A stretch of 64,000 bases of DNA, from positions 124,001 through 188,000 of the IMG/VR virus record IMGVR_UViG_3300041402_000314; one strand, written 5' to 3'. How positions within the stretch are numbered: the first letter of the stretch is position 1; the number at the start of each line of letters is the position of its first letter. This document shows, one piece after another, positions 97-38,661 of this stretch. Both the position numbers and the translations under genes were made by a program. Below the pieces are notes generated by a model that saw nothing but the letters and a program-made list of their open reading frames with translations, made no database searches and was not told the DNA's origin.

Positions 97-297
97 ATGA
101 GTAACGAAATATTAAATAAAATAGCTGGTGTCTTAGAAGAAGGCAAAGTAGTAAAATTGAGTAGTGATGGTGATATCAGTGTTAAAAAGGCTATAGCGAA
201 TCATATCACTATCAGAGATGATAGTGTCGGAGCCATAATTTCTATCAATAAAAAATATCTAAAAGATTTGGTAGATTTCATTCAAAAGGAATTTTAA
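97..297 (+). CDS. Small protein with array-type leader (ILNKIAGVLEE|G), putative internal head protein
   Basis: ORF track; N-terminus resembles the leader shared by ORFs at 914-5299. Confidence 0.55.
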   Translation: MSNEILNKIAGVLEEGKVVKLSSDGDISVKKAIANHITIRDDSVGAIISINKKYLKDLVDFIQKEF

Positions 298-311
298 AGG
301 AGATTGAAAAG

Positions 312-473
312 GTGTATGATACCAAAGTAACATTGAAGAAAGTCGAAGAAGGTTATTATCATGGTTACTATGAAGGAAAGCAGATTCTAGGCGGTAAAAA
401 GAGTGAACTAGTTAGAATGATGAAACTGATGGTTCAGGGTATAATGGAATCCGAGAGAAAGAAGCTGACTTGA
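312..473 (+). CDS. Small hypothetical protein (GTG start, about 53 aa)
   Basis: Hand-translated open frame VYDTKVTLKKVEEGYYHGYYEGK...; below ORF-track cutoff. Confidence 0.45.
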   Translation: MYDTKVTLKKVEEGYYHGYYEGKQILGGKKSELVRMMKLMVQGIMESERKKLT

Positions 474-499
474 CAAACCATATCAATATGTAGTATAAT
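470..499 (+). promoter_or_regulatory. Sigma70-type promoter
   Basis: TTGACA (470-475), 18-nt spacer, TATAAT (494-499). Confidence 0.6.
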
Positions 500-573
500 A
501 GAGACAACTTGGACAGAAAAAACTGTTATGACACACTAAAATATAGATAATCTTGATCTGAAATATGGTTGGT

Positions 574-605
574 AAGCCTAGACGCTGTTAAGTCTAGGCT
601 TTTTT
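574..605 (+). terminator. Intrinsic terminator
   Basis: AAGCCTAGAC/GTCTAGGCTT 10-bp stem followed by T tract. Confidence 0.8.
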
Positions 606-617
606 ATTTTCAGGATA

Positions 618-625
618 TATAAATA
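618..625 (+). promoter_or_regulatory. T4-type late promoter upstream of the small-protein array
   Basis: TATAAATA; same motif recurs before most structural genes. Confidence 0.7.
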
Positions 626-657
626 ATTATAATAAACCTGTAATAAAGGAAACCACT

Positions 658-903
658 ATGAGCTTTAAGGATAAGATTATTAAGTATATCTGGAATAATC
701 TATTAGCATTTGATAGACAAGTTAATGCTCTTCTATGCGGAGACCCAGAGGAAACTATCAGTTCTCGTATGGGTAAATTAGTTGAGCAAGATAGATGTCC
801 TTTCTGTTATTTTATCTGTACACATTTTCTACACAAATTAGACCCAGATCATTGCCAGAAGTCAATTGACAGAGACGAAGGCGATGATGAAATAAAATTT
901 TAG
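658..903 (+). CDS. Phage hypothetical protein, Cys/His-containing
   Basis: RBS AAAGGA; motif NALLCGDPEETISSRMG...C..C...LDPDHC. Confidence 0.7.
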   Translation: MSFKDKIIKYIWNNLLAFDRQVNALLCGDPEETISSRMGKLVEQDRCPFCYFICTHFLHKLDPDHCQKSIDRDEGDDEIKF

Positions 904-913
904 GAGAATAAAT

Positions 914-1519
914 ATGTCAAGTTTCAAAGATTACATGACCAAAGAAAAGAATAATGATATCATCAATGATGGACATTTCCATGTAGAAAAGATGGGAGGT
1001 AGAACAGGTCCACCTATTAGAGTTAAGACCGATGATGGCAGAACAACCCATATCCATAATCAAAGTGATGGTAAGGATACAGTCGAAGCTAAAGATGTAG
1101 GTGGTTTCGTTAATAGGGATGATATAGAAGACAATGTAACTTCTCTTCCAAAAAGCCCAAATCATACCCATATGCAAACTGATGGACAGCATACCTCACC
1201 AGCTATATATCCTGAAGTAGAAGAAGATCAGAAGGGTATTAGTATCGGTGGTATCTCTGAGAAGATAGAACAAGTTCTTGAGGGTAAGGGTAAATTCGAT
1301 AAGAAAAATCTAAAAGGTAAAAATACCAAGATAATAGACCCTCATAACAAAGATAAGATTTGGTATTTTGATGATATACAGGATAATAAGATTAGAGTGA
1401 CACAAGTAGTTTTAGGTAGCATTACAGGTCAAAGTGTTATGTCACTTAAAGATGTGAATGAATTACTTAAAGGATTAGGCAAACAAAGTTTCGGTACTTT
1501 AGGATTTAGGGAGAATTAA
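914..1519 (+). CDS. Putative internal head protein
   Basis: N-term MSSFKDYMTKE resembles T4 IP targeting peptide; internal EKIEQVLE|G copy of array leader. Confidence 0.55.
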   Translation: MSSFKDYMTKEKNNDIINDGHFHVEKMGGRTGPPIRVKTDDGRTTHIHNQSDGKDTVEAKDVGGFVNRDDIEDNVTSLPKSPNHTHMQTDGQHTSPAIYPEVEEDQKGISIGGISEKIEQVLEGKGKFDKKNLKGKNTKIIDPHNKDKIWYFDDIQDNKIRVTQVVLGSITGQSVMSLKDVNELLKGLGKQSFGTLGFREN

Positions 1520-1522
1520 ATA

Positions 1523-1857
1523 ATGGATTTAATAGAGAAGATAGAACAAGTATTAATTGAAGGTAAGATCAAAAAGTTTAAGGGTGATAATCCTTTTTCA
1601 AAATCAAATCTATATATGGTTGGAGCTGGTATGGATACGAATGGAAATCATGTGGTATCGATAAAATTTCCTAATTCCAGCGCATTTACAATTCAAACCG
1701 CTGGTAATTTGAACACCGCTCATGATGCATTGAGAGGGGTGAAAGATTATGAGACCGAAATAGATGATTCCACAAAAAGAAGATAGAAAAAGAGATTGTT
1801 GAATATGTCAAGGATTATGGGTCTAAGGCACAACAATCAAAACTAAAAACATATTAA
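1523..1857 (+). CDS. Putative internal head protein; frame breaks at A5 run 1774-1778 (track ORF ends 1786)
   Basis: Leader MDLIEKIEQVLIE|G; -1 frame continues KKIEKEIVEYVKDYGSKAQQSKLKTY to TAA 1857, just before the next RBS. Confidence 0.55.
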
Positions 1858-1868
1858 AGGGGAATCAA

Positions 1869-2255
1869 ATGAAAATCATAGACAGGATAGACAATATTTT
1901 AAATGAAGCATCTAAAGAAATAGATGAGACTTCTGGTACTGAATTGGAAATGTATATAGAGAATGATAGCCAATTATATAGTCAACAATTTATTCCTATA
2001 GTAAAAAATCTGATGACTAAGAGAGCGCAGGGAAAATATGATAGTAAAAAGGCTGTTAAGCTCTTCATGTATCTTATGGAATCTGGAGCCAAGAAATATG
2101 TTAAGGATTTTGGCGGTACTTGGAATATAATGTTCAATAAGCCTACTAGAGAGTGGACAGCCAAAAGATTTGTGGAGAATTTCGATAACGAAGCCGAAAT
2201 AGGTGGTTACGATGAGTACATACCTAAAAAATATCAAAAGAAAGCTAAGAAATAG
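1869..2255 (+). CDS. Putative internal head protein
   Basis: Leader MKIIDRIDNILNE|A. Confidence 0.65.
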   Translation: MKIIDRIDNILNEASKEIDETSGTELEMYIENDSQLYSQQFIPIVKNLMTKRAQGKYDSKKAVKLFMYLMESGAKKYVKDFGGTWNIMFNKPTREWTAKRFVENFDNEAEIGGYDEYIPKKYQKKAKK

Positions 2256-2263
2256 GAGAAATA

Positions 2264-2992
2264 ATGAGAATCGTAGAGAAAATAGATAAGATATTAAACG
2301 AAGGTAAGAAGACAAAGATCAAGAAGCCGTCATGGAAGGAACTAAAGAAGCGTATCCAGAAACTTAAGAAGATAAAGTTTAAGAAACCTTCTAAGCCTAA
2401 GAATTCCATGACCATTACTAGCAGAATAAAGAAGAGTGCGAAAAAATTATTCAAAAGTCTCTTCAAAAAGATGAGATTAACAGAATCTAGTGATGCTAAA
2501 GTAAAAGCATTGGCTGATTTTAAGGAAGTAGAGACTGATGAAATCACTGATTTGAGTTATGGGTTTGAGGTTGATAGTGAAGAATATATGGTTCTTACTG
2601 ATTCAGAAGCGGATGATGCTACAAAGGAATATATAGAGGAAAGTATTTGGGCTTTTAACACAGATTTTCTTCTTGGTCAGATGACGTTAGCAGATGTCAA
2701 TAAATATTATGGTCTCGAAGATTCATATTACGATGAAGATACAGAAGAAGATGTCGAAATCGGTGATGATGAAGAAGTATTCTATATGGGTATGGGTATG
2801 ACATTAGAGGAATGGATTAAAGAAAAACAAGGCGAGTATGAAAGTGGTAATCAGGAATTACTTCGTCTCATAGATGATATCGATGAATTTGTAGAGGAAG
2901 CTATCAGATGGGATGGTAGAGGTCACTTCTTATCTTCTTATGATGGTGATGAGAATGAAGAAGGCGATTACTACATCTACAGAACAAATTAA
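2264..2992 (+). CDS. Putative internal head protein: basic segment followed by highly acidic domain
   Basis: Leader MRIVEKIDKILNE|G, Lys-rich stretch, second LTE|S site, D/E-rich C-terminal domain. Confidence 0.65.
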   Translation: MRIVEKIDKILNEGKKTKIKKPSWKELKKRIQKLKKIKFKKPSKPKNSMTITSRIKKSAKKLFKSLFKKMRLTESSDAKVKALADFKEVETDEITDLSYGFEVDSEEYMVLTDSEADDATKEYIEESIWAFNTDFLLGQMTLADVNKYYGLEDSYYDEDTEEDVEIGDDEEVFYMGMGMTLEEWIKEKQGEYESGNQELLRLIDDIDEFVEEAIRWDGRGHFLSSYDGDENEEGDYYIYRTN

Positions 2993-3006
2993 GGAGAACT
3001 TAGATA

Positions 3007-3234
3007 ATGGATATTACAGAAAAGATGGAAATAATGTTAGGTGAAGCTTTTGACGTGGAAGAGTTCGATGATGTCAAATCTAAGGCATCTAAGAAGCTCT
3101 TCAAGGTCGTAGAAATTTTAATGAAGGGCGGTGCAAGGGTATTCAAGTTAAGACCTCTTGAAGGCAAAGCTACGGCTTCTGATGAGTTTGATGTCGAGAA
3201 CAAGAAATTCTTTAAAGAATACGTGGCTGCATAA
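3007..3234 (+). CDS. Putative internal head protein
   Basis: Leader MDITEKMEIMLGE|A; RBS GGAG. Confidence 0.6.
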   Translation: MDITEKMEIMLGEAFDVEEFDDVKSKASKKLFKVVEILMKGGARVFKLRPLEGKATASDEFDVENKKFFKEYVAA

Positions 3235-3246
3235 GGAGAGGGAAAT

Positions 3247-3583
3247 ATGAGTATTATAGACAAGATAGATAATATCACTGAAGGTAGAGATACGAGAGGA
3301 GTTCTAACAAAAAGAATCGATTTCGAGAAATTAATTAAGAAGATAAAAGGCATGACTGCTAGAAATGATCATACTGGAGCCTATATATTAATTTCTTCTG
3401 AGATACTGAAAAAATAAGAAGCTGGTAAAGATTTTTACTGCTATAGAAGATATTACCAATGTCGATAATGGGATGTCGGGGAATCTCTCTAAATTTAGTC
3501 ATGAGAAATATCAAGAAATGATGAATCTAGTCAAAGCAAAATTAGATGACCGAGATTATCAAGCAATATACCAATCAACATAA
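3247..3583 (+). CDS. Putative internal head protein; frame breaks at A6 run 3409-3414
   Basis: Leader MSIIDKIDNITE|G; TAA at 3415, +1 frame continues NKKLVKIFTAIEDITNV...YQST to TAA 3583, just before the next RBS. Confidence 0.55.
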
Positions 3584-3591
3584 GGAGAACT

Positions 3592-3936
3592 ATGAGTAAA
3601 TTAATAGATAAGATAGAAAGTGTATTGAATGAAGCTAAGAAAAGAAAAGCCTCTTTCGGGAAAACCAAAGATATGAGTTATGCTGTCCAGATTGATAGCC
3701 TAGATAGTAATGATTTCTATACTCAGGCATTCGGTAGACAAATTAGCGATCTGAGGAAAGCGGATGAATTTATTAAAACAGCTAAGAAAGGTTATGTTGA
3801 TGGTAAAGGCAAAGCAACACTTCCTGCCGTCAGAAAATGGGTAAAGGAAAATCAGCCTTCAGAATTCTATGCTAAATGGAAATCAGATAGTTCTTGGTAT
3901 AAAGATGATAGCATAGAAATCTTTTATAAGAAATAA
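3592..3936 (+). CDS. Putative internal head protein
   Basis: Leader MSKLIDKIESVLNE|A. Confidence 0.65.
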   Translation: MSKLIDKIESVLNEAKKRKASFGKTKDMSYAVQIDSLDSNDFYTQAFGRQISDLRKADEFIKTAKKGYVDGKGKATLPAVRKWVKENQPSEFYAKWKSDSSWYKDDSIEIFYKK

Positions 3937-3944
3937 GGAGAATC

Positions 3945-4118
3945 ATGAATTTCAAAGATTATATATTAAACGAAAAATCTAAAGAAGCTTCAGAAGTTCT
4001 ACAGCTTATGGATAAGGACGAAGACGCTGATTATGGAAAGGCTTTAAAAGCTGTTCTGAAGAAGTATCCTAAAGTTGATAAAAAGGCTTTGGAAAAAGAA
4101 TTGAATAAATATATTTAA
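3945..4118 (+). CDS. Putative internal head protein (57 aa, not in ORF track)
   Basis: RBS AAGGAG; MNFKDYILNE|KSKEASEVLQLMDKDED... Confidence 0.6.
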   Translation: MNFKDYILNEKSKEASEVLQLMDKDEDADYGKALKAVLKKYPKVDKKALEKELNKYI

Positions 4119-4131
4119 GGAGATAGAACTA

Positions 4132-4359
4132 ATGGACATATTAGATAAGATAGACGCAGCACTAAACGAAGATTCAACTGAAAACGCAAAGAAAACCCTT
4201 CAAGCTATTATAGGTACTCTCAAGAAGTCTGAAGGAAAAGATAAGGATGAGATGCTAGATATGGCTAATGGTATAATGGATTACTACAAGAAAGAAAAAT
4301 CCTTTGCGCCTAAACAAGCCGAATGGATTTTCAATACCTCTAAAGCATTATTTAAGTAA
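4132..4359 (+). CDS. Putative internal head protein
   Basis: Leader MDILDKIDAALNE|D. Confidence 0.65.
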   Translation: MDILDKIDAALNEDSTENAKKTLQAIIGTLKKSEGKDKDEMLDMANGIMDYYKKEKSFAPKQAEWIFNTSKALFK

Positions 4360-4368
4360 GGATATAAA

Positions 4369-4581
4369 ATGGATATTATAGAAAAGATAGATGAAACATT
4401 AGAAGAAGCCACATCATCCGATGGTATAGATGTAAAGGGTTTACTGAATGATTTAAGAAAGGCCGAGAACAATATGAAACAATTAGCAAGTACGGTCAAT
4501 CATTTTAAACCCGGTAAAGTTAGAGCAGATGATTATGTCGAACCTATTAAAAATGCTGTTAAAAAATTAAAAGGTAAGTAA
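4369..4581 (+). CDS. Putative internal head protein
   Basis: Leader MDIIEKIDETLEE|A. Confidence 0.65.
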   Translation: MDIIEKIDETLEEATSSDGIDVKGLLNDLRKAENNMKQLASTVNHFKPGKVRADDYVEPIKNAVKKLKGK

Positions 4582-4593
4582 AGGATTAATACT

Positions 4594-4842
4594 ATGTCAA
4601 AGACATTCATAGAATACCTCTCAGAGGCTAGATTTGACGTTATAAGCAAAGAAAAAACAAAAGATGGGCGGAAGCTTCACCATACAGTAGAAATCGCCTC
4701 TAAGACGAAAATAGACGTTGATGATGTCGCTACTAAAGTTGGTTATCCTCCAATGGCTTATGGATTGTCAAAATCCAAGGTAACTAAACTGGATAATGGA
4801 AATTTTAAATATGAATGGGATTCTGCTTCAAATGCAGGATAA
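4594..4842 (+). CDS. Putative internal head protein
   Basis: MSKTFIEYLSE|AR, close to T4 IPII/IPIII MKTYQEFIAE|A. Confidence 0.65.
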   Translation: MSKTFIEYLSEARFDVISKEKTKDGRKLHHTVEIASKTKIDVDDVATKVGYPPMAYGLSKSKVTKLDNGNFKYEWDSASNAG

Positions 4843-4850
4843 GGAGAGAT

Positions 4851-5084
4851 ATGGATATAACTGAGAAGATAGATGTCATTCTCCTAGAAAACGAGCTAGA
4901 TGAGGGTATAAAAGAACTGGCAAAGAACGCTATAATCTCAGTATTGATAAGTATAGCAGTAATGGTAGGCGGTGGCTCACCAGTTAAATTAGCAGTCGAG
5001 AAGGCTCATAAAGAACATCGAGTTACGGATGTGAGTGTTGATCAGCTCGAAAAATTATATAAGTCAATAAAAACGAGGGTGTAA
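4851..5084 (+). CDS. Putative internal head protein (start revised from 4815)
   Basis: RBS AAGGAG before ATG 4851; leader MDITEKIDVILLE. Confidence 0.6.
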   Translation: MDITEKIDVILLENELDEGIKELAKNAIISVLISIAVMVGGGSPVKLAVEKAHKEHRVTDVSVDQLEKLYKSIKTRV

Positions 5085-5086
5085 GG

Positions 5087-5299
5087 ATGGATATTTTAGA
5101 TAAGATAGAAGAAGCTACAGAGAAAAAGAAATTCAATCAGAAGAAATTCTTCATGGCTTATAATAAAGCGTTTACTGTAATGAGAGATATAGTAAGTGAC
5201 CCTAAATTTGGGTTAGATATTGAAGATGCTAGAAAATTAAATAATATAGCTAAAGAATTTTATGATTCTTCTGAAGAAATATGGAAAAGAAATAAATAA
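5087..5299 (+). CDS. Putative internal head protein
   Basis: Leader MDILDKIEEATE|K. Confidence 0.6.
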   Translation: MDILDKIEEATEKKKFNQKKFFMAYNKAFTVMRDIVSDPKFGLDIEDARKLNNIAKEFYDSSEEIWKRNK

Positions 5300-5330
5300 A
5301 TTATCCTATCTACAAAGAAGGAAGAAGTTG

Positions 5331-5361
5331 GGCGGTGTCTATATCAGGCATCGCCTTTTTT
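5331..5361 (+). terminator. Intrinsic terminator closing the array
   Basis: GGCGGTGTCT/AGGCATCGCC stem (G-U pairs only on + strand) then T tract. Confidence 0.8.
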
Positions 5362-5416: not shown

Positions 5417-6643
5417 ATGGCTGGTAGAGATGTTAGTAATACTAACTTAGGTAAATTAGAAGCTTTGTATGATATCGTTGATGTTTTATCTGGAACTTCG
5501 GGAGAAGGAGAACAAAAAACGGCTTTCGATGAATTATTGATAGCAGAACTTACTCCAGTTATTCAATTACAATTTCCTTATAATATAAATACGGATTTAT
5601 TATCTATAACTACTTCCGTTTCTGGTGATGTCACTCAATCAAATACTAAAGCAGTTATTGAAACTGGAGCTAGTAGTAGCAGTTCAGCATCTATACAAAG
5701 TAAGAAAGTATTGAAATATAATCCCGGTCAAGGTTCCTTAGTTAGATTTACCGCGTTATTTACTGCTGGAGTAAATGGGTCATCTCAGTTAATTGGAGTC
5801 GGAGATGATCAAGATGGATTTTTTGTAGGTTGTGATGACACTACTTTTGGTATTTTAAGAAGACAGAATGGTGTTGATACATGGACATATCAAACTAATT
5901 GGAACGGTGATAAAGCAGATAATAGTGGAACTTTACCTGTTATAGATTTCACTAAAGGTAATGTATTTCAAATTCGATATCAATGGTTAGGTTATGGTGC
6001 TATAAAATTTTATATAGAAAACCCAAGCAATGGTAAATTAATATTAGTACATACAATTCCATATGCTAATGCTTATACGATAGCATCTATTTACAATCCT
6101 ACTTTACCATTATTTGTAAAGGCAGAAAATACTACAAATGATACTAATATTAAAATAGAAACATCTTCTTTAGCTGGATTCGTTGAGGGCAAATTAGAAA
6201 CTAAATCTTCTTCATTAGTGAAAGCTAAAGGTAATTTAAAAGCTGCAATAACTACAGAAACTAATCTTATAACGATTAGAAACAAAAGTACGTATCAATC
6301 AAAAACTAACAGAGTTAGAGTGAAGCCCATATTTATTTCATTGGCGAACGAAGGAACTAAAACTGTCAAGTACAGGTACTTGTTAAATGCTACTATCGGT
6401 GGTACGCCATCATTTAATAGTATAGATGTGAATAATTCAGTTATTGAATATGATATTGCTGGAACAACAATAACTGATGAAGGAAGTGAACTTTTTACTG
6501 TAGATTTAGCAAAATCTGATTCCGACCGAATAACTTTACCATTTGATATTCCTTTGAATCCCGGAGATTCATTAACTATTACAGCGGAGTCATCTTCATC
6601 TACAGATGCAGAAGCTTCAGTTACATGGGAAGAATTATTTTAA
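5417..6643 (+). CDS. Probable beta-rich virion structural protein
   Basis: Late promoter; Ser/Thr/Gly-rich beta-strand pattern; no family assignment possible by eye. Confidence 0.55.
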   Translation: MAGRDVSNTNLGKLEALYDIVDVLSGTSGEGEQKTAFDELLIAELTPVIQLQFPYNINTDLLSITTSVSGDVTQSNTKAVIETGASSSSSASIQSKKVLKYNPGQGSLVRFTALFTAGVNGSSQLIGVGDDQDGFFVGCDDTTFGILRRQNGVDTWTYQTNWNGDKADNSGTLPVIDFTKGNVFQIRYQWLGYGAIKFYIENPSNGKLILVHTIPYANAYTIASIYNPTLPLFVKAENTTNDTNIKIETSSLAGFVEGKLETKSSSLVKAKGNLKAAITTETNLITIRNKSTYQSKTNRVRVKPIFISLANEGTKTVKYRYLLNATIGGTPSFNSIDVNNSVIEYDIAGTTITDEGSELFTVDLAKSDSDRITLPFDIPLNPGDSLTITAESSSSTDAEASVTWEELF

Positions 6644-6654
6644 AGGGAACTAAC

Positions 6655-6849
6655 ATGGATTCAGATATATTGGTTGATATGAGATCAAAGAAAATATTAG
6701 GCGGTTCCGCTTTCATACATAAGATAAAAGGTTATGTGATATGGAAAGTCTTGTCGATAGATAAGGCAGGAAAGATAAAAGATAATTTTACCTTCAAAGA
6801 CGAGATATTAGCCACTGAGAAATTCGAAGATATCACGGAGATCGATTAA
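6655..6849 (+). CDS. Hypothetical protein
   Basis: MDSDILVDMRSKK..., RBS AAGGG; track start 6625 overlaps upstream gene. Confidence 0.45.
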   Translation: MDSDILVDMRSKKILGGSAFIHKIKGYVIWKVLSIDKAGKIKDNFTFKDEILATEKFEDITEID

Positions 6850-8030
6850 TGTTTTCCAAATACTGCCTCTTTGGGTGTCCAGCCGCAACGTAATCTGGAA
6901 GCTATGACACCATACTTATTTCTGGATATTTCAGCCCATTCTTTCATGGATTTTTTATCACCATCTATAGTTAGACCTTTCTTTTTTCCATAGACTGCCT
7001 TTTCGGGAGACCAACCTATATTCATTCTCCCTCTAATTATTTCTGGGGTATTCCCAGAAAGTTCAGCCCATTCTTTTATAGTTTTAGTTTCTCCGTTGAA
7101 TGTTAAATATTTCTTAGTTTTATGTTCGGAAAATACAGCTTCCTTTTCAGACCATCCATTTCCCAATCTGGTATGTATAGTATTGAAATTAGTTCCAGAT
7201 TTATTAGACCATTCCTTTACGGTTTTAGTTACGCCATTTATTGTTAAATATTTCTTATTTTTATGTTCTGAAAATACTGCTTCTTTAGGAGACCAACCAG
7301 CTTTTAGCCTCCCTCTTATAGTATTAAAGTCTATACCAGAAAGTTCAGACCATTTTTTCACAGATTTAGTTTCACCCTCTACAGTCAGATACAATGTTAT
7401 TTTACATTCATCTCTTATTATTGTCTCGATTCGTTTGCGAATTTGTTCAGGTGATTATTTCTTACCAAATTGGGAATGTTTTTCACCTCTTTGGGAGTCA
7501 CTAATTAATTTCCTAGTTTCTTCAGAATGTGTTTTACCATACATACCATTTTTCTCACCAGATGACATTTCTGAATATCTCAGTCTTTCTTCTGGATTTT
7601 CAAAACGTCTGATTTGTGCCTTTCGTAATTTCTCTATGGTTTCTTCAGTCGGTATATACCCACAACATCCTTCACCTCCATTAGTCTTATTGAGCAAAGG
7701 CCCTAATCCCAAATCTACTCTACCTACCACTCTTATTATATATCTTTCTTTAGCAAAGGCTTCCTGTTCTGTTACATTTTCTAATATCTTGATTATTTTA
7801 GGCTCATAACCATCTTCTATTATTTCTCTAAGTAGATTTAATTTATCCGAATCAATATCTGTATTAATAGCATCTTTGGCATGTACTTCACATCTATCAT
7901 CAAGACCTTTACCTCCATAGATAGGAAGATAGTCTAGTGTTAATTTACCGCCATCATAAATGAAAGTACCTGTATGTCTTGGGTCTAATATTATATATGT
8001 ATAGAAAATAGGGTCTTCGGGATTGGTCAT
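6846..8030 (-). pseudogene. Free-standing GIY-YIG-like homing endonuclease (NUMOD3 plus 4 tandem DNA-binding repeats) split by one in-frame TAA
   Basis: 8030-7455: YTY..LDPR...IYGGKG..DR..H...E..L.N...GGEG and GKTHSEETRK; after TAA 7457-7455 the same frame continues SPEQIRKRIET... into 7394-6846 with four LTxxGETKT.KEW.E.SG....TI..R...GWS..EAV repeats. Confidence 0.75.
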
Positions 8031-8056: not shown

Positions 8057-8124
8057 TGAGAGGGACAGCAAGTAGATTGCTCCACTTGTTGCTAGGTAGT
8101 TCGTGCTATCTAGCTAACCTCTTA
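8057..8124 (+). ncRNA. Putative three-way-junction structured RNA, copy 1
   Basis: P1 TGAGAGG/CCTCTTA, GA, P2 CAGCAAGT/ACTTGTTG with GCTCC in loop, P3 CTAGGTAG/CTATCTAG, CTAA; starts 5 nt after TATAAATA 8045-8052. Confidence 0.55.
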
Positions 8125-8131
8125 TTATAAC

Positions 8132-8139
8132 TATTTATA
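8132..8139 (-). promoter_or_regulatory. T4-type late promoter for the GIY-YIG-like gene
   Basis: TATTTATA on + = TATAAATA on -. Confidence 0.55.
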
Positions 8140-8162
8140 CATCGAGATATTTTTCTGGAAAC

Positions 8163-8170
8163 TATAAATA
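8163..8170 (+). promoter_or_regulatory. T4-type late promoter
   Basis: TATAAATA upstream of gp14. Confidence 0.7.
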
Positions 8171-8196
8171 GTTAAAACAATATTAAAAGGAATATT

Positions 8197-8781
8197 ATGA
8201 GTTTTAATTTTACTAACACTCCAGACAGAGCAGTGTATGAAAATACTTTAGCTGAAAGTATCGAAATTTTCGGAATTTCGATAGAATATCTCGTGGTTGA
8301 ATATGACGAAACCAAAGAAAAACTCTATGCTGAAGACAGCAAACCACATACAACCGCTAGATATTTGATGAAAGCACAGGCGGAGTATCTGGGTTCCGAG
8401 GATTTCATGCTAACAAAATTTGGGCTACAGAGCAGTGACCAAATGGAACTCGTCATATCAAAATCAAAATTCGAAGAAATCGTTGGCGATGGTGCGGAAC
8501 CCAAGAGCGGTGATCGTGTATATATTACTTATCAAGATAGATACTATACGGTCGCGGACGCGAAGGAAGAATCCAACATTTTTCTTCAACGGAAATTTTC
8601 GTGGATGCTTATTCTTAACCCTACTGACCTCATTGGAGCCGAAGTTACGCCTAATATTGGTGTACCTGATTATGAGGACGAAGAAGATATTTTTAATGAT
8701 AATGATCTTATCGATGAATTGGATGATGATATCGTAGTAGAGAAGACAGACGATGTTAATCCTTTCGGTGATTGGGAATAG
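8197..8781 (+). CDS. gp14: Neck/head-completion protein, T4 gp14-like
   Basis: E.IEIFG..IEY...LYAED...LTKFGL...D.MEL.I....F.....P..GD.VY motif pattern; position before gp15. Confidence 0.8.
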   Translation: MSFNFTNTPDRAVYENTLAESIEIFGISIEYLVVEYDETKEKLYAEDSKPHTTARYLMKAQAEYLGSEDFMLTKFGLQSSDQMELVISKSKFEEIVGDGAEPKSGDRVYITYQDRYYTVADAKEESNIFLQRKFSWMLILNPTDLIGAEVTPNIGVPDYEDEEDIFNDNDLIDELDDDIVVEKTDDVNPFGDWE

Positions 8782-8806
8782 GAAAGGTTAATAAAGGAGA
8801 CTAATT

Positions 8807-9376
8807 ATGGCAGATGAAACACCAAATACTAATTTAGCGAAACTGGATGTTCTTATCAGTCGTTTACTTGCTGATGAAAATTCTGGTAACTTAAGAACAA
8901 TTAGTACCGTACATGAAAAAATCCACAAAGGAGAAATCTATGTATTTGGACATTATGATACATCGGTAGCTAATAATGGAAACCTAGACATTCTATTTAA
9001 AACAGGAGCTTCTTTAAGAAGTGATATTATAGTTAATATTGCCAGTACAGGAGATGCAGAAGTACGTATTTATGAGGCTCCTACGACAAGTGGTGATGGA
9101 ACACCTTTAACACCGAGAAATAAAAATAGGTACACAACTGATACCGTTACTTTTTCTGTTTTCCATACACCAACGGTTGATGTTGTCGGAACAGAATTAA
9201 TAAATCAGTTTGTTGCTGGTGGTTCTGGTGGTATAAAAATTGGTGCTTCTACTGAAGAAAGAGATGAATGGGTTTTTAAACATGGTGTAAATTATTTGTT
9301 AAGAGCAACAAATATATCTGGCCTATCTGCTAAAATAAATGTTGTTGCCTCCGTATATGAAGCATCTAATATCTGA
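8807..9376 (+). CDS. Probable virion protein, paralog of 56180-56737
   Basis: Shared HEKIHxG, RNxN, EWV...YLLRxxNxSG motifs. Confidence 0.55.
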   Translation: MADETPNTNLAKLDVLISRLLADENSGNLRTISTVHEKIHKGEIYVFGHYDTSVANNGNLDILFKTGASLRSDIIVNIASTGDAEVRIYEAPTTSGDGTPLTPRNKNRYTTDTVTFSVFHTPTVDVVGTELINQFVAGGSGGIKIGASTEERDEWVFKHGVNYLLRATNISGLSAKINVVASVYEASNI

Positions 9377-9384
9377 TATAAATA
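9377..9384 (+). promoter_or_regulatory. T4-type late promoter
   Basis: TATAAATA. Confidence 0.65.
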
Positions 9385-9409
9385 GTTAAAACATGAGGAG
9401 AAAGAATAG

Positions 9410-9562
9410 ATGGGTAATGATAAGACCAATAATAAAAAGTTTAATAGATCAATAACCTTAAATAAACTCAAAAGCTCTACAGATCAAAATAAGACCGTTA
9501 TGGCTATAGCATTTGAAGAAGTTCTGAGAGCAACAACAAATAAAACTAAACAGACTAACTAA
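9410..9562 (+). CDS. Small basic hypothetical protein (50 aa)
   Basis: RBS GAGGAG; hand-translated MGNDKTNNKKFNRS... Confidence 0.45.
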   Translation: MGNDKTNNKKFNRSITLNKLKSSTDQNKTVMAIAFEEVLRATTNKTKQTN

Positions 9563-9564
9563 TT

Positions 9565-10323
9565 ATGAGAACCTATTTTTTCCCAAATATTTTAAAAAAA
9601 ATACATATAGCTTTCCTTTCCCAATTTAAGGATTTGCAAGTAGCTAAATATGATAGTGCTGGTAATATACTTAATATGAGACAGGTTCCTATCACATTCG
9701 GACATAAAGGTAAGGAAATATCTATAGCTCAGAAGAAGGACAAAAGAAATTATTCAACTTTTTTGCCAAGAATTGCCGTGATGATGTCATCTATTAATCC
9801 TGCTCCTGAAAAGAGTAGAGGTGGTCATCTCGTAGAATTATGTAAATATACTACTGGTAGCGCAGATACCCTCCAGAAGTTATATGGTGGTTATCCATAT
9901 AAAATAGGCTATACTCTAACTATTCTTACCGAACATATGGGTGAGGCCAGTCAAATAATAGAACAGATATTACCTAGTTTTGTTCCATTTAAAAATGTGA
10001 CTATCAGGGAATTTGATTTTCTTCCTAGTTTCACTAGAGATATTCCTATATTATTAACTAGCGTAACTCCTACATTTCAAGATGAAACCACAGAAGATGA
10101 AATCAAGAGAATAGAATTCGATATTGAGTTTGATGTTGATTGTATGTTTTATAGACCTATACTCACTAGTGATATTATCAAAACCGTTAATGTTGATCTA
10201 ATTGATAGTTCTTTAGTTCCAGATATAACAGGAAATGATTTAGCTGGTTATGAATATGCTGTTAGTGGTGACGATATTGATGATTTTGATGTATTGACCG
10301 ATGAATGGACTGAATATATTTAA
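9565..10323 (+). CDS. gp15: Tail sheath stabilizer/terminator, T4 gp15-like
   Basis: YF...I...F...F.DLQV...VPITFG...LPRI...PY.I...L.I......QIIEQILPSF.P...RDIPI.L. Confidence 0.85.
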   Translation: MRTYFFPNILKKIHIAFLSQFKDLQVAKYDSAGNILNMRQVPITFGHKGKEISIAQKKDKRNYSTFLPRIAVMMSSINPAPEKSRGGHLVELCKYTTGSADTLQKLYGGYPYKIGYTLTILTEHMGEASQIIEQILPSFVPFKNVTIREFDFLPSFTRDIPILLTSVTPTFQDETTEDEIKRIEFDIEFDVDCMFYRPILTSDIIKTVNVDLIDSSLVPDITGNDLAGYEYAVSGDDIDDFDVLTDEWTEYI

Positions 10324-10331
10324 GGAGAAAT

Positions 10332-10502
10332 GTGAAAAACAGAACTAAGTTCAATTGGCAATGTCCTCATTGTAAGAAAAGAAACATAGAGTCGTGGAAT
10401 TTTCAATTTGATGTACCAAAAGTATATGAAGTTATTGTCCTTTGCTCTAAATGCAATGAAGAATCCAGAATTGATTTTCGTTTTAATATTATGCCTATAT
10501 AA
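10332..10502 (+). CDS. Zn-ribbon protein (GTG start)
   Basis: CPHC...CSKC; RBS AAGGAG. Confidence 0.55.
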   Translation: MKNRTKFNWQCPHCKKRNIESWNFQFDVPKVYEVIVLCSKCNEESRIDFRFNIMPI

Positions 10503-10523
10503 ACTTAGAGAAGAGAGGAACCT

Positions 10524-10871
10524 ATGGATTTAGAAAAATTTAGAATTGGTTTAGTATTTCGTAACAATGATATCATTGTTTTAGGTGAATATAAAGACGA
10601 TGGTACGATGGATGAAGATTCTATGGGTGTCATTTCTGATTTTGATTCCATATATGAAGACTTACCATTAAATAAATTTGGTGTAGTCGAAATCCAGAGA
10701 TCAGAGAAGAATGGTGAAGATCAAATAGAATTAAAAGATTATCATACTTATGCTATAGGTGAAAATGCAGGTATAGAAAGCGTTATGGAGATTTATAGAG
10801 AAGACTCAGAAGATTTTTTCGATATAATAAATGATCTATATGAGTCTATACTAAATGAAATCGCCCACTAA
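10524..10871 (+). CDS. Acidic hypothetical protein
   Basis: ORF track; RBS GAGGA. Confidence 0.6.
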   Translation: MDLEKFRIGLVFRNNDIIVLGEYKDDGTMDEDSMGVISDFDSIYEDLPLNKFGVVEIQRSEKNGEDQIELKDYHTYAIGENAGIESVMEIYREDSEDFFDIINDLYESILNEIAH

Positions 10872-10972
10872 TTATAAATGTGAAGCGTGTAAAGATACTG
10901 GTTATGTATCGGTAAAATGTCTAATAGAGGACTATAAAAGAAAATGTCCTTGTTGTTATGAGGTAAAAATAA

Positions 10973-11176
10973 ATGAGCCAAAAAGAAGAAAAGACGATAG
11001 AGGAAATAACTAAAGAGATCGACATTATTTTCCCTGTAATAGAATCCATTAAATCAATAGACTTACCTGATTATAATGACCCTTGCGCTGGATGTAGTAA
11101 TAATCCTAAAAATAATCCTCATGCATCTGGTATATGCGGATGTACATTACCTTATATGACCAGAACTACTTATTAA
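10973..11176 (+). CDS. Cys-rich hypothetical protein
   Basis: PCAGCSNNP...GICGCTLP. Confidence 0.55.
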   Translation: MSQKEEKTIEEITKEIDIIFPVIESIKSIDLPDYNDPCAGCSNNPKNNPHASGICGCTLPYMTRTTY

Positions 11177-11332: not shown

Positions 11333-11809
11333 ATGGACAAGAAAAAGAAGAAAGTAGCAGCTAAAGGTTTGGATGATGCTTTTAACATTACCTATGAAGA
11401 AAGTGAATTACCTATTAAGGGTTCTGAGACCGATAATCTTCCTATCATCGATGGTGAGACAGGTAAGATATTAGACTTCCCTGAAGTAGAAAGTGATTTC
11501 GATTTCATTAAAAGAGAATTAAGAGCTAATGTTCAAATGGCTAAAGAAGCTCTCGATAGAGCTATAGAAATTCAGAAGGAAGATGAGAAGGCCAGAAATA
11601 CAGAAGTTATTGCTGATATGATCGACTCTATCAATAGCTGTCTTAAAGAGCTAGGTTCTATTAATAAAATAGAAACCGAGTTAGCTCTTAAGACAAATAA
11701 AGAAACTGGTGAAGATCATGGCGGTGGAGATGTCACTAACAATGTATTGGTTGTCGGTAATACATCCGAGATACTAAAACAAATAGCTGATGGGATGAAG
11801 AAGGATTAA
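11333..11809 (+). CDS. terS: Terminase small subunit, T4 gp16-like
   Basis: DFDFIKREL...AKEAL...ARNTEV...and C-terminal TNNVLVVGNTSEIL typical of T4-like gp16. Confidence 0.75.
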   Translation: MDKKKKKVAAKGLDDAFNITYEESELPIKGSETDNLPIIDGETGKILDFPEVESDFDFIKRELRANVQMAKEALDRAIEIQKEDEKARNTEVIADMIDSINSCLKELGSINKIETELALKTNKETGEDHGGGDVTNNVLVVGNTSEILKQIADGMKKD

Positions 11810-21862: not shown

Positions 21863-22207
21863 TTATGAAGTAATTCTACCAGCTTTCGAAGCGTCTTCAG
21901 CGTATATACTGAGAGGAAAGTTAAACGATGCGTACCTATCTCTTTCGACACCCAGACCAAATGGTGGGAATCTCATTGCTTCGAGTTCATCCCTAGAAAC
22001 GTATCCTAACTCAGGGAACCCTTGCCCAAGATCACAGAGACCGAAGAACATTCTGCTCTCCTCGTCATATTCCGTAATTAACCATGTACATGCTCCGCCA
22101 CCGAAAAACTTAACTACTGGTATGAAGTCAGACTCCCCACCAGACTCTTGATTGATCTTAGAGTTCCTAACCAGCTTATCTTCGATTATCTTAGTCATTA
22201 GTTTCAT
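21863..22207 (-). CDS. DUF2958-like protein
   Basis: PVVKFF.GGA.TWLITE.D.....FGLCDLG.G.PELGYVS..EL......G..VERD. Confidence 0.8.
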   Translation of the reverse strand: MKLMTKIIEDKLVRNSKINQESGGESDFIPVVKFFGGGACTWLITEYDEESRMFFGLCDLGQGFPELGYVSRDELEAMRFPPFGLGVERDRYASFNFPLSIYAEDASKAGRITS

Positions 22208-22237
22208 TTCGATCTCCTTTAATTAATGTTTCTCTTA

Positions 22238-22288
22238 ATTATGAGTACAGCTTATCATAGGTAGATGTGGAAGTCAAGAACTATTTTA
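22238..22288 (-). repeat. 51-bp promoter-containing direct repeat, copy B
   Basis: TTGACT-17-TAAGCT; see 20945-20995. Confidence 0.8.
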
Positions 22289-22289
22289 T

Positions 22290-22325
22290 AAAAAAAGGTA
22301 GGCCGAATTAACGACCCACCTTTTT
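22290..22325 (-). terminator. Intrinsic terminator closing the channel/TAXI/YjfK/PspA operon
   Basis: On - strand GGTGGGTCG/CGGCCTACC stem (needs G-U pairs, so strand-specific) then T7. Confidence 0.75.
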
Positions 22326-22346
22326 GATACCATATATTTATTATTG

Positions 22347-23108: not shown

Positions 23109-23127
23109 TTTATTTCTCCTTTTTATT

Positions 23128-23808: not shown

Positions 23809-23810
23809 GA

Positions 23811-25415: not shown

Positions 25416-25442
25416 GTTACTTTATCCTCCTATATTTCCTTA

Positions 25443-26477: not shown

Positions 26478-26487
26478 GATTGTCTCC

Positions 26488-26516
26488 ATTATACCTAATT
26501 ATAATTTATTTGTCAA
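26488..26516 (-). promoter_or_regulatory. Consensus sigma70 promoter of the channel operon
   Basis: TTGACA-17-TATAAT on - strand. Confidence 0.75.
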
Positions 26517-37319: not shown

Positions 37320-37377
37320 GGAAGGACAGTGGGTAGCTCCCATTGATGATGTGTTTACTCCATATCATCTTACTTCC
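37320..37377 (+). ncRNA. Putative three-way-junction structured RNA, copy 2 (5' leader of nuclease gene)
   Basis: P1 GGAAG/CTTCC, GA, P2 CAGTGGG/CCCATTG with GCTCC, P3 ATGATGTG/CATATCAT, CTTA; starts 6 nt after TATAAATA 37307-37314. Confidence 0.55.
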
Positions 37378-37407
37378 ATACATAACTTAAATAATGGAGT
37401 AAACATT

Positions 37408-38406: not shown

Positions 38407-38661
38407 ATGAGTACCATAGATAAGATAGATAGTCTATTAGAAGCGAAGAAACCTCTAAAAGGAAAAGTGGTGGACTTAGCTAAAAAATTCAAGAAAGGTG
38501 ATATTGTCAAAAGGAAAGATGGTAAGCCCTTTCTTGATACAGGAAGCCATGAATTAAATCCAGCATATCGACTAAAAGTACGTGATGTTGAAGAAGGTAA
38601 AATATGGATTGAATATTCAATCGGGTGGATTAACCCAGAAAAATTAATAAAAACCAAATAG
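38407..38661 (+). CDS. Isolated putative internal head protein
   Basis: Leader MSTIDKIDSLLE|A matches the 914-5299 array. Confidence 0.6.
   Translation: MSTIDKIDSLLEAKKPLKGKVVDLAKKFKKGDIVKRKDGKPFLDTGSHELNPAYRLKVRDVEEGKIWIEYSIGWINPEKLIKTK

What the first reader, a model, noticed from the sequence alone, without database searches (positions are those of the whole stretch)
97..5299. Array of about 14 unrelated small proteins sharing a capsid-targeting / prohead-protease leader
Seen: consecutive ORFs start with M(D/S/K/R)I(I/L/T)(D/E)KI(D/E)xxLxE or M(S)xF(K/I)(D/E)YxxE (e.g. MDIIEKIDETLEE|A, MKIIDRIDNILNE|A, MSKTFIEYLSE|AR, MNFKDYILNE|K). After the Glu the sequences are unrelated. Most of the block sits between a late promoter (618) and a terminator (5331). 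Established: T4 internal proteins carry a ~10-aa targeting leader (MKTYQEFIAE) removed by gp21 after (I/L)xE; they are injected with the DNA, and IPI* inhibits GmrSD. Inference: a large modular arsenal of injected payloads, probably anti-defence or host-takeover factors, using two leader types. The array may extend upstream of the window.
Basis: partly seen in the sequence, partly recalled or inferred. Interest (0 to 1): 0.82.

Follow-up and report, generated by a model that had tools for sequence, protein, structure and literature searches.

The report
Giant array of capsid-targeted phage proteins
An uncultivated T4-like phage carries more than 20 tandem small genes whose unrelated proteins all start with a short, swappable tag that matches the known T4 signal for loading proteins into the phage head and injecting them into the host, so this is an unusually large version of a known system.

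Summary
In window 97-5299, 14 of 16 consecutive + strand ORFs begin with one of two short leaders that end in (L/I)xE. The parts after the leader show no similarity to each other.

The array extends about 3.7 kb upstream of the window. There it holds 7 more leader genes, including a third leader type, and it surrounds the neck gene gp13.

The same contig encodes a T4-type head module: portal, S77 (gp21-like) prohead protease with its catalytic His and Ser, scaffold and major capsid protein. Array operons and head genes share the same extended T4-type late promoter.

Leader type B (MxKTFxEY(L/I)xE) is essentially the T4 internal-protein capsid targeting sequence (MKTYQEFIAE, MKTFKEF). Type A (MDI(I/L)(E/D)KI(D/E)xxLxE) also heads a small gene between portal and protease.

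In related phages, orthologous cargoes carry the other leader type, carry no leader at all, or are fused behind an internal leader. The leader is therefore a modular address tag under peptide-level selection.

The concept is already known from T-even internal proteins (Ip1-3 inhibit GmrSD). What is new is the scale, the several interchangeable leader classes, the fusions, and the deep-branching lineage. Packaging, cleavage and anti-defence roles are inferred, not shown.

The parts
97..297 (+). Leader gene, 66 aa, type A-like (MSNEILNKIAGVLEE|GK). It is the last gene of the upstream sub-operon.
   Evidence: PSSM 12.8 bits
312..473 (+). Leaderless 53-aa gene (GTG start) embedded in the array and conserved in relatives.
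   Evidence: 85% identity in L104
574..601 (+). Intrinsic-terminator-like hairpin that ends the upstream sub-operon.
618..625 (+). T4-type late promoter TATAAATA, in the extended form TATAAATAATTA also found before the portal, scaffold and capsid genes.
658..903 (+). Leaderless Cys/His-rich 81-aa gene. It is not an array cargo.
   Evidence: (phrog_3342, residues 3-74)
914..1519 (+). Two-module fusion, 201 aa. Type B leader MSSFKDYMTKE|K plus cargo X, then an internal type A leader GGISEKIEQVLE|GK (codons from 1250) plus cargo Y.
   Evidence: the L104 orthologue ends right after the internal leader
1523..1786 (+). Type A leader gene (MDLIEKIEQVLIE|GK). Its C-terminus is frameshifted; the continuation is readable in another frame at 1765-1857.
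   Evidence: the L103 orthologue has a type B leader and the longer C-terminus
1869..2255 (+). Type A leader gene, 128 aa (MKIIDRIDNILNE|A).
2264..2992 (+). Type A leader (MRIVEKIDKILNE|G), then a lysine-rich linker of about 60 aa, then an acidic cargo domain (about aa 70-242) that occurs alone in other phages.
3007..3234 (+). Type A leader gene, 75 aa (MDITEKMEIMLGE|A).
3247..3583 (+). Type A leader gene (MSIIDKIDNITE|G), apparently split by a frameshift at an A-run near 3405. The pieces are 3247-3417 and 3419-3583.
3592..3936 (+). Type A leader gene, 114 aa (MSKLIDKIESVLNE|A).
3945..4118 (+). Type B leader gene, 57 aa (MNFKDYILNE|K). The orthologue in L103 carries a type A leader.
4132..4359 (+). 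Type A leader gene, 75 aa (MDILDKIDAALNE|D). In L103 it is fused behind another cargo with its leader kept internally.
4369..4581 (+). Type A leader gene, 70 aa (MDIIEKIDETLEE|A).
4594..4842 (+). Type B leader gene, 82 aa (MSKTFIEYLSE|A). This is the closest match to the T4 CTS.
4851..5084 (+). Type A leader gene, 77 aa (MDITEKIDVILLE|N). The true start is the second ATG, which has an AAGGAG ribosome-binding site.
5087..5299 (+). Degenerate type A leader gene, 70 aa (MDILDKIEEATE|K, with Ala at P3).
   Evidence: 14.2 bits
5330..5356 (+). Intrinsic-terminator-like hairpin that closes the array.
38407..38661 (+). Dispersed type A leader gene, 84 aa (MSTIDKIDSLLE|A), between the sheath/endonuclease genes and the tail tube gene. 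It has its own TATAAATA at 38384.

Best explanation
This is a hyper-expanded internal-protein locus of a deep-branching, uncultivated T4-like myovirus.

Each gene encodes a 10-22 residue N-terminal propeptide fused to an unrelated, mostly small and basic cargo. Three propeptide classes occur:
- Type A: MDI(I/L)(E/D)KI(D/E)xxLxE.
- Type B: Mx(K)(T)Fx(D/E)Y(L/I)xE, which matches the T4 capsid targeting sequence.
- Type C, found only upstream of the window: MxKxLLTQGNDV..LMxQI(D/N)E.

The genes are transcribed late together with the head genes.

Proposed mechanism (inferred). The amphipathic propeptide binds the gp22-type scaffolding core, so the protein is built into the prohead. The gp21-type S77 protease then cuts after the (L/I)xE Glu and frees the cargo inside the head. 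Fusion proteins with internal leaders would be cut into separate cargoes. The cargoes leave with the DNA at infection and act before any phage gene is expressed. By analogy with T4 Ip1-3, the most likely roles are neutralising host defences or otherwise preparing the cell.

Evolution. The array changes by cassette gain, loss, fusion and leader exchange, partly through recombination between the similar leader sequences.

Shown here: the anatomy of the array, the leader statistics, the head module and protease, the promoters, the modularity and swapping of leaders, and the turnover between relatives.

Inferred: scaffold binding, cleavage, packaging, injection and cargo function.
For: - Leader statistics are far beyond chance.
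- Type B matches T4 IPII/IPIII MKTYQEFIAE|A and IPI MKTFKEF. The aromatic residues are spaced as at the T4 targeting positions 4 and 7, and the aliphatic residue and Glu as at processing positions 8 and 10 (PMC9026906).
- The same contig has portal, S77 protease, scaffold and gp23. The protease is 28% identical to T4 gp21 and keeps His in GELGHP and Ser in GISTRG.
- A type A leader heads the 102-aa gene between portal and protease, the position of T4 gp67/gp68. Related contigs L006 and L009 show the same.
- The scaffold has 17 [LI]xE against 8.5 expected; T4 gp22 has 16 against 5.8. The capsid protein has ILE45|A46 just before its conserved core.
- The extended late promoter TATAAATA(A/C)TT precedes the array sub-operons and the head genes.
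- Peptide-level selection on the leader: pairwise identity at codon positions 1, 2 and 3 is 0.67, 0.76 and 0.44, and the flanks are near random.
- Modularity. w1523 (type A) corresponds to L103_9662 (type B), and w3945 (type B) to L103_11638 (type A). The w2264 cargo carries a type A leader in close relatives, a type B-like leader in P0010, P0012 and P0016, and no leader in the homologues of about 140 aa.
- Fusions keep an internal LxE site.
- High gene turnover between relatives whose gp13 and gp14 are 60-89% identical.
- Other contigs hold arrays of 7-10 such genes.
- Cargoes are small and mostly basic (pI at least 8.2 in 18 of 22), like T4 IPII and IPIII.
Against: - There are no virion proteomics, so neither cleavage nor packaging has been observed.
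- Four of 24 leaders lack L or I at P3 (V, V, M, A).
- Type A has no experimentally characterised counterpart.
- No cargo shows homology to any known anti-defence protein or to T4 IPs.
- Some genes are frameshifted or truncated, so part of the array may be decaying.
- More than 20 different cargoes would have to share limited head space, so copy numbers per virion may be low or only some may be packaged.
- The nearest deposited relatives, HTVC008M and C48C1, lack such leaders. Nothing can therefore be transferred from a cultured system.
Confidence: 0.75

Rival explanations
1. The leader-bearing proteins are mainly structural or assembly components of the prohead core, or DNA-condensing basic head proteins. 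They would be targeted and cleaved like T4 gp67/gp68, but they would not be host-directed effectors.
For: The type A leader also heads the gene in the gp67/gp68 position. The scaffold itself starts with a similar motif, MNPLEKLIEFIE. Most cargoes are small, lysine-rich and basic. The literature reports IP lysines contacting DNA phosphates in T4 heads (PMC3012670).
Against: Core assembly proteins are expected to be conserved, but array content differs strongly between close relatives. At least two cargo domains occur as stand-alone genes in unrelated phages without T4-type heads. All three T4 IPs turned out to be defence inhibitors (PMC12373910).
Confidence: 0.15
2. The conserved 5' ends are primarily DNA-level recombination sites for cassette shuffling, or translation-initiation elements. 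The encoded peptide would have no targeting role.
For: Leader DNA copies share exact runs of up to about 16 nt (D8). One relative (L104) has a deletion whose endpoints lie in two leaders. Repoila-type elements are known at T-even IP loci (PMC2839356).
Against: Conservation is at the protein level: codon position 3 identity is 0.44 against 0.67 and 0.76 at positions 1 and 2. Orthologues swap between two leader classes that are unlike at the DNA level yet both end in (L/I)xE. The same peptide is found on dispersed genes and in distant contigs with different codons.
Confidence: 0.05
3. The genes are one fast-diverging paralogous family. Only the N-terminus would have stayed recognisable.
For: Tandem arrangement, similar sizes, shared N-terminus.
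Against: There is no residual similarity between mature parts. Sizes range from 44 to 229 aa. Several cargoes belong to different PHROG families found in unrelated phages without the leader. The w2264 cargo is a distinct, well-folded domain (pLDDT 93.8) with leaderless homologues.
Confidence: 0.03

Closest known systems
T4 / T-even internal proteins IPI, IPII, IPIII (Ip1-3) with the capsid targeting sequence (CTS)
   Same: A short N-terminal propeptide sits on otherwise unrelated small proteins. Type B is near-identical in pattern to MKTYQEFIAE and MKTFKEF. The propeptide ends in (L/I)xE, the gp21 site. The genome has a gp21-type protease and a gp22-type scaffold. The genes cluster in a hypervariable locus whose content differs between relatives. 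The literature already describes T-even IPs as a diverse set of defence-countering proteins that share only the CTS (PMC3012670, PMC9026906, PMC12373910).
   Different: Scale: at least 21 leader genes in one locus of about 9 kb, plus 2 dispersed, against 3 in T4, 'at least 10' reported for T-even phages (PMC12373910) and 'more than 30' variants in all (PMC2839356). A dominant second leader class (A) and a third (C) occur, and they are interchangeable on orthologous cargo. Multi-cargo fusions carry internal leaders. The locus lies between gp13 and gp14. The host phage has only about 31-36% capsid-protein identity to T4 and to any deposited phage. No cargo is homologous to T4 IPs.
T4 prohead core proteins gp67 and gp68, and the gp24, gp22 and gp21 propeptides
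   Same: They have N-terminal propeptides removed at (L/I)xE: MAKINELLRE|S, MLKEQLIAE|A, MLLIPETHELVLE|N. A type A leader gene occupies the gp67/gp68 position between portal and protease.
   Different: Those are conserved single-copy assembly genes. The array genes are variable, and relatives show that none is needed in every genome.
phiKZ / SPN3US inner-body and ejection proteins processed by a gp21-related protease
   Same: Many head-internal proteins are cleaved after Glu by a T4 gp21 homologue, and paralogous sets of packaged proteins are ejected into the host (PMC9026906, PMC5694885).
   Different: From my own recall, the cleavage motif there is (S/A/G)xE and the propeptides are long; PMC9026906 states only cleavage after Glu with few other determinants. 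Here P3 is L or I in 20 of 24. This phage has a canonical T4-like head, neck and tail gene set.
Phage P1 Dar anti-restriction proteins (DarA, DarB, Hdf and others)
   Same: Head-packaged, injected anti-restriction proteins whose incorporation is linked to head morphogenesis (PMC12810830, PMC9024508).
   Different: As far as I recall, packaging there is hierarchical and protein-dependent rather than through a shared short cleavable leader. No homology was detected.

Membership tests
T4-type CTS-bearing internal proteins | N-terminal propeptide of about 10-19 aa with hydrophobic or aromatic targeting positions (4 and 7 in IPIII) and processing positions (L/I at 8, E at 10) | tested here: met
   Type B leaders keep the spacing aromatic, then aromatic at +3, aliphatic at +1 and Glu at +2, as in T4 IPII/IPIII. 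Type A keeps an extended amphipathic pattern that ends in LxE. The positions come from PMC9026906.
T4-type CTS-bearing internal proteins | The genome encodes a gp21-type (Peptidase_S77) prohead protease and a gp22-type scaffolding core | tested here: met
   L004 8392-9069 matches PF03420 (4.9e-20) and phrog_207 (2.3e-54), with the catalytic His and Ser aligned to T4 gp21 and PDB 5jbl. L004 9138-9923 matches PF25623 T4_CASP.
T4-type CTS-bearing internal proteins | Mature parts are unrelated to each other, and the locus is hypervariable between related phages | tested here: met
   All-vs-all BLASTP of the mature parts. Orthologue mapping against L103 and L104 shows gains, losses, fusions and leader swaps.
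T4-type CTS-bearing internal proteins | Synthesis at the time of prohead assembly | tested here: inconclusive
   T4-type late promoters precede the array sub-operons and the head genes. These are only promoter motifs; no expression data exist.
T4-type CTS-bearing internal proteins | The protein is present in the mature virion with the propeptide removed after Glu | not testable with these tools
   The phage is an uncultivated metagenomic contig, and no proteomics are available.
T4-type CTS-bearing internal proteins | Injection with the DNA and action on a host target (for example GmrSD inhibition by Ip1-3) | not testable with these tools
   No cargo resembles T4 IPs or any Pfam family. The w2264 cargo fold has no PDB match.
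phiKZ-like inner-body / ejection proteins | (S/A/G)xE cleavage motif (my own recall, not checked in a paper here) and a phiKZ-like genome background | tested here: not met
   P3 is L or I in 20 of 24 leaders. The genome has T4-type portal, gp23, gp13/14/15, sheath, gp5 and gp6.
PeSL-type mobile promoter/stem-loop cassettes of T4-like hyperplastic regions | Each shuffled gene is flanked by a composite early-promoter plus stem-loop motif | tested here: not met
   Array genes are separated by only about 8-90 nt with a ribosome-binding site and no promoter or hairpin. A single composite lies at 470-625: a 12/12 sigma-70-like promoter, a hairpin and a late promoter.

The most novel reading that the evidence does not exclude
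In a widespread, uncultivated lineage of T4-like phages, the capsid-targeting propeptide has become a general, interchangeable address label with at least three classes. It lets the phage load a large and rapidly changing set of more than 20 unrelated cargoes into the head, including multi-cargo polyproteins cut apart by the prohead protease. Leader-to-leader recombination drives cassette gain, loss and fusion. If so, the leader is a sequence handle for finding injected effectors, and thus candidate anti-defence proteins, directly in metagenomes.
Probability: 0.45. Interest if true: 0.65.

Novelty: new variant of a known kind. Interest (0 to 1): 0.55.

Why it matters
Injected phage proteins act before any phage gene is expressed, and all three T4 examples are now known to block host restriction systems. 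Very few such proteins are known, and almost all come from coliphages.

This locus suggests that the T4 targeting tag is conserved across phages whose capsid proteins share only about 31-36% identity. It also shows that the tag can label more than 20 cargoes in one genome, and that it is exchanged freely between cargoes.

That gives a simple sequence rule for finding candidate injected effectors in uncultivated phages, and a catalogue of new small proteins to screen against defence systems. One of them has a confidently predicted fold with no solved relative. It also offers alternative tags for protein-delivery vectors based on T4-like capsids.

Tried and rejected
- Megablast of the first 8 kb against deposited phages found nothing.
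- The best tblastn hit of the neighbouring 408-aa structural gene, the huge-phage record LR745208, is high-GC and has no leaders or array.
- The nearest deposited relatives by capsid protein were scanned. HTVC008M (88 kb scanned) and C48C1 (31 kb around the head module) lack both leader types, and gp13 and gp14 are adjacent in C48C1.
- tblastn of the head-module leader gene against deposited phages gave no match.
- Pfam on 10 window cargoes and 4 upstream ones gave nothing above threshold. PHROGs gave only function-unknown families.
- A faint ArdA lead for the w2264 cargo (score 0.55) was not supported. The AlphaFold model has pLDDT 93.8 but no PDB match at E<=0.001, and it matches only uncharacterised viral proteins in BFVD.
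- BLASTP of T4 IPI, IPII and IPIII against all array proteins showed only leader-level resemblance.
- [LI]xE is not depleted in the mature cargoes: 19 observed against 21 expected.
- Rfam and tRNA scans of the window found nothing.
- Sigma-70-like promoters are not enriched overall in the array.
- Repoila et al. 1994 could not be read.
- I did not read frameshifted genes through their stops; the pieces were treated separately.

Full report
**Origin and genome context**

The window is bases 124001-188000 of a 204,149-bp IMG/VR contig, IMGVR_UViG_3300041402_000314. It has about 33-35% G+C and no close DNA relative among deposited phages.

The window encodes a T4-like myovirus structural set:
- neck protein gp14-like (8197-8781)
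- gp15/gp3-like sheath stabiliser (9565-10323)
- small and large terminase (11333-11809 and 27243-28868)
- sheath (35664-37304) and tail tube (38704-39213)
- baseplate hub, gp48-like, gp5-like and gp6-like proteins

Its capsid protein is at most about 36% identical to that of any deposited phage. The best hits are Phage C48C1, Pelagibacter phage HTVC008M, Stenotrophomonas Smp14-like phages and Melnitz. This is therefore a deep branch of the T4 superfamily.

**Check of the observation**

Window 97-5299 holds 16 consecutive + strand ORFs with AAGGAG-type ribosome-binding sites and very short spacers. Fourteen of them start with a leader.

- Type A, M(D/K/R/S)(I/L)(I/V/T/L)(E/D)(K/R)(I/M)(D/E)xx(L/I)xE, or a degenerate form of it, is at 97, 1523, 1869, 2264, 3007, 3247, 3592, 4132, 4369, 4851 and 5087.
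- Type B, M(S/N)(K)(T)F(K/I)(D/E)Y(L/I/M)x(x)E, is at 914, 3945 and 4594.
- ORF 312-473 has no leader.
- ORF 658-903 resembles type B only in its first residues (MSFKD). It matches phrog_3342 over its whole length and has no Glu site, so it is not a member.

The statistics are clear. A type A regex hits nine times in the six-frame translation of all 64 kb, always directly after the start Met of a + strand ORF at 1529-4857. A position-specific scoring matrix (PSSM) run over 87 kb of the contig gives scores above 12 bits almost only at array N-termini. That includes sites that were not used to build the matrix. Type B has six N-terminal matches against 0.2 expected from shuffled translations.

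After the Glu, the proteins show no pairwise BLASTP similarity at E<0.05.

The late promoter TATAAATA at 618 and the terminator at 5330-5356 are present. TATAAATA occurs 27 times in the window against 15.8 expected. Of these, 23 are on the + strand, and many sit just upstream of structural genes.

**Extension beyond the window**

Walking upstream on the same contig (loci L001, L003, L004) shows that the array continues for about 3.7 kb. The additional leader genes, in L001 coordinates, are:
- 869, type B: MNFKEYLDE|A
- 1948 and 2272, a third 21-22 residue leader (type C): M(T)K(D/N)(L/V)LTQGNDV..(F/E)LM(N/S)QI(D/N)E|
- 2589, type A-like: MKKLMEQLDLVLE|G
- 3003, type A-like: MSKRLLEQLDSVLITE|D
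- 3599 and 4187, type B: MSKTFSEYIKE|G and MNKTFKEYLKE|G

The neck gene gp13 (L001 1148-1888; phrog_211 here, PF26809 in relatives) lies inside the array. No leader genes lie further upstream.

The locus thus holds 21 leader genes, or 22 cargo modules when the fusion in 914-1519 is counted. It fills most of the 10.9 kb between gp13 and gp14. Those two genes are adjacent in C48C1.

Two further leader genes are dispersed. One is at window 38407-38661, with its own late promoter. The other is in the head module.

**The head module and the protease**

About 9 kb upstream of the array, the contig encodes the following, in L004 coordinates:
- portal gp20 (6196-7854; PF07230, 5e-123)
- a 102-aa gene with a type A leader (8072-8380; MSVIDKIDNLLNE|A)
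- a Peptidase_S77 prohead protease (8392-9069)
- a gp22-type scaffold (9138-9923)
- the gp23 capsid protein (10001-11143)

The protease is 28% identical to T4 gp21. It keeps the His of GELNHP and the Ser of GVSSRG. These are the two positions replaced by Ala in the solved T4 gp21 structure 5jbl.

Three observations fit a conserved (L/I)xE specificity:
- The scaffold starts MNPLEKLIEFIE|K.
- The scaffold has 17 [LI]xE motifs against 8.5 expected from composition. This mirrors T4 gp22, with 16 against 5.8. Sheath, portal and the 408-aa structural protein are depleted.
- The capsid protein has ILE45|A46 immediately before the first block that aligns with mature T4 gp23.

These points are consistent with that specificity but do not prove it.

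**Comparison with T4**

I read the T4 sequences from NC_000866 with the tools:
- IPII and IPIII start MKTYQEFIAE|A.
- IPI starts MKTFKEFTS...ITE|A.
- gp24, gp22, gp68 and gp21 start MAKINELLRE|S, MLKEQLIAE|A, MLLIPETHELVLE|N and MNEPQLLIE|T.

Type B leaders reproduce the T4 capsid targeting sequence (CTS). The spacing of aromatic, aromatic, aliphatic and Glu residues is the same. Mullaney and Black mapped these positions as targeting residues 4 and 7 and processing residues 8 and 10 (summarised in PMC9026906).

Type A has no characterised counterpart. It is an amphipathic extension ending in LxE, and it sits on the gene in the gp67/gp68 position. The same holds in related contigs L006 and L009.

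**The leader is a selected, modular peptide**

Across ten type A copies, pairwise identity is 0.67, 0.76 and 0.44 at codon positions 1, 2 and 3. The 36 nt downstream (0.32) and the 20 nt upstream (0.38) are near random. Selection therefore acts on the peptide, not on the DNA.

Homologues of the 242-aa protein w2264 show modularity directly:
- Close relatives (57-84% identity) keep the type A leader.
- More distant full-length relatives carry type B-like leaders on the same linker and cargo: P0010 MKNLEHFLNE|G, P0012 MKSFKTFYEE|V, P0016 MKALNEFLNE|S.
- About 70 homologues of roughly 140 aa are the bare cargo domain.

Two related contigs were compared in detail. They were fetched through P0003 and P0002: L103 from ENA ERZ23498475 and L104 from ERZ23498525. 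Their gp13 and gp14 are 60-89% identical to this contig's.
- w1523 (type A) has a 72%-identical orthologue with a type B leader, MTTFKEYINE|GKIKKF.
- w3945 (type B) has a 79%-identical orthologue with a type A leader, MDIVEKIDNILE|AKSKEAS.
- w4132 is fused in L103 behind another cargo, with its leader kept internally as ...IDMALHE|N.
- w914 in the window is itself such a fusion.
- In L104, the segment between the internal leader of w914 and the leader of w1523 is missing. That is what recombination between two leaders would produce.
- Many genes are unique to one of the three phages.

**Distribution**

A degenerate DNA pattern for the first eight residues of type A found 79 stretches in IMG/VR. 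Fifteen of the 82 individual pattern matches in them continue with a complete leader ending in x(L/I)xE. Several contigs hold arrays that mix both leader types: about 10 consecutive genes in L041 and 7 in L035, with smaller sets in L027 and L056.

A type B pattern found about 30 other contigs. Most of them carry one of two conserved proteins that start M(M/A)KTFKEY(L/I)(S/T)E|S.

The tag system is therefore widespread in uncultivated T4-like phages. The locus here is the largest I saw, but my census is small.

**The cargoes**

Mature sizes are 44-229 aa. Eighteen of 22 have pI of at least 8.2.

No window cargo matches a Pfam family. A few match function-unknown PHROGs, and those matches start after the leader.

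The upstream cargo at L001 2589-2993 belongs to phrog_1915. That family is widespread in mycobacteriophages, rV5-like coliphages and phiCbK-like phages, where it lacks the leader. In several of those records the gene lies near a genome end or in a terminal repeat.

The w2264 cargo domain gives a confident model (pLDDT 93.8, pTM 0.83) with a conserved DGRGHF motif. It has no PDB match at E<=0.001 and matches only uncharacterised viral proteins in BFVD.

No cargo resembles T4 IPI, IPII or IPIII. An anti-defence role therefore rests on analogy only. In T4, Ip1, Ip2 and Ip3 each inhibit a distinct GmrSD type IV restriction enzyme (PMC12373910).

**What is known and what is new**

The literature already states that T-even internal proteins are a diverse set of proteins sharing only a CTS and encoded in hypervariable loci. 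It says they are probably an arms-race arsenal. It gives three in T4, 'at least 10' reported for T-even phages and 'more than 30' variants in all (PMC3012670, PMC9026906, PMC2839356, PMC12373910).

The finding is therefore a member of a known kind. The features that I did not find described in the papers I searched and read are:
- its size in one genome (at least 21 tandem genes plus 2 dispersed)
- the coexistence and interchange of several leader classes
- multi-cargo fusions with internal cleavable leaders
- its position between gp13 and gp14
- conservation of the T4-type CTS in a lineage this far from the T-evens

**Verdict**

The capsid-targeting and prohead-protease reading is well supported by sequence evidence (confidence about 0.75) but has not been demonstrated. 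The anti-defence payload role is plausible and untested.

Noticed in passing
window 470-625: A perfect 12/12 sigma-70-like promoter (TTGACA-18-TATAAT, 470-499) is followed about 75 nt later by a strong hairpin terminator (574-601) and then the late promoter (618-625). This could be a short early transcript or small RNA, or a PeSL-like composite element that splits the array into two operons. There is no Rfam match.
   Followed up: partly
window 1765-1857 (with 1523-1786): The C-terminus of the 87-aa gene is frameshifted relative to its 109-aa orthologue in L103. The missing tail (KKKIEKEIVEYVKDYGSKAQQSKLKTY) is readable in another frame. The same truncated end occurs in the independent assembly L104, so this is a real allele or a slippage site at an A-run rather than an assembly error.
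   Followed up: partly
window 3247-3583: A leader gene appears split by a frameshift at the run ctgaaaaaataag near 3405. The orthologue in L104 is also truncated, to 40 aa, which suggests that array members decay.
   Followed up: partly
L001 3599-4113 (upstream of the window): A type B leader gene whose cargo contains an HExxH motif (HELTH; phrog_16532 and phrog_10499, function unknown). It is possibly continued by the next ORF after a frameshift, so it is a candidate packaged metallopeptidase.
   Followed up: no
window 2264-2992: The cargo domain (about aa 70-242) is predicted with high confidence (pLDDT 93.8) but has no match among solved structures. It carries an invariant DGRGHF...D.E motif and is common as a stand-alone phage protein of about 140 aa. 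In this phage it sits behind a lysine-rich linker of about 60 residues.
   Followed up: yes
window 6846-8030, 37351-38388; L003 1624-2703: Several homing-endonuclease-type genes interrupt the structural modules. They are a protein with repeated HNH-associated DNA-binding modules (6846-7394, minus strand), a GIY-YIG gene (7455-8030, minus strand), a TnsA-like endonuclease ORF between sheath and tail tube, and a GIY-YIG gene directly after the capsid gene.
   Followed up: partly
window 22000-26500, minus strand: A local G+C rise (0.39-0.42 against about 0.34) covers large genes with only function-unknown PHROG matches: 23811-25415 (phrog_6856) and 25443-26489 (phrog_10776).
   Followed up: no
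L014 3837-6798 and 9800-10459 (IMGVR_UViG_3300009716_000068): A more distant T4-like contig carries three tandem paralogues of about 300 aa plus a fourth gene, all starting MKL(S/Q/V)I(L/I)LE(A/S). This is another leader-like N-terminus ending in LxE, but here on related rather than unrelated proteins.
   Followed up: no
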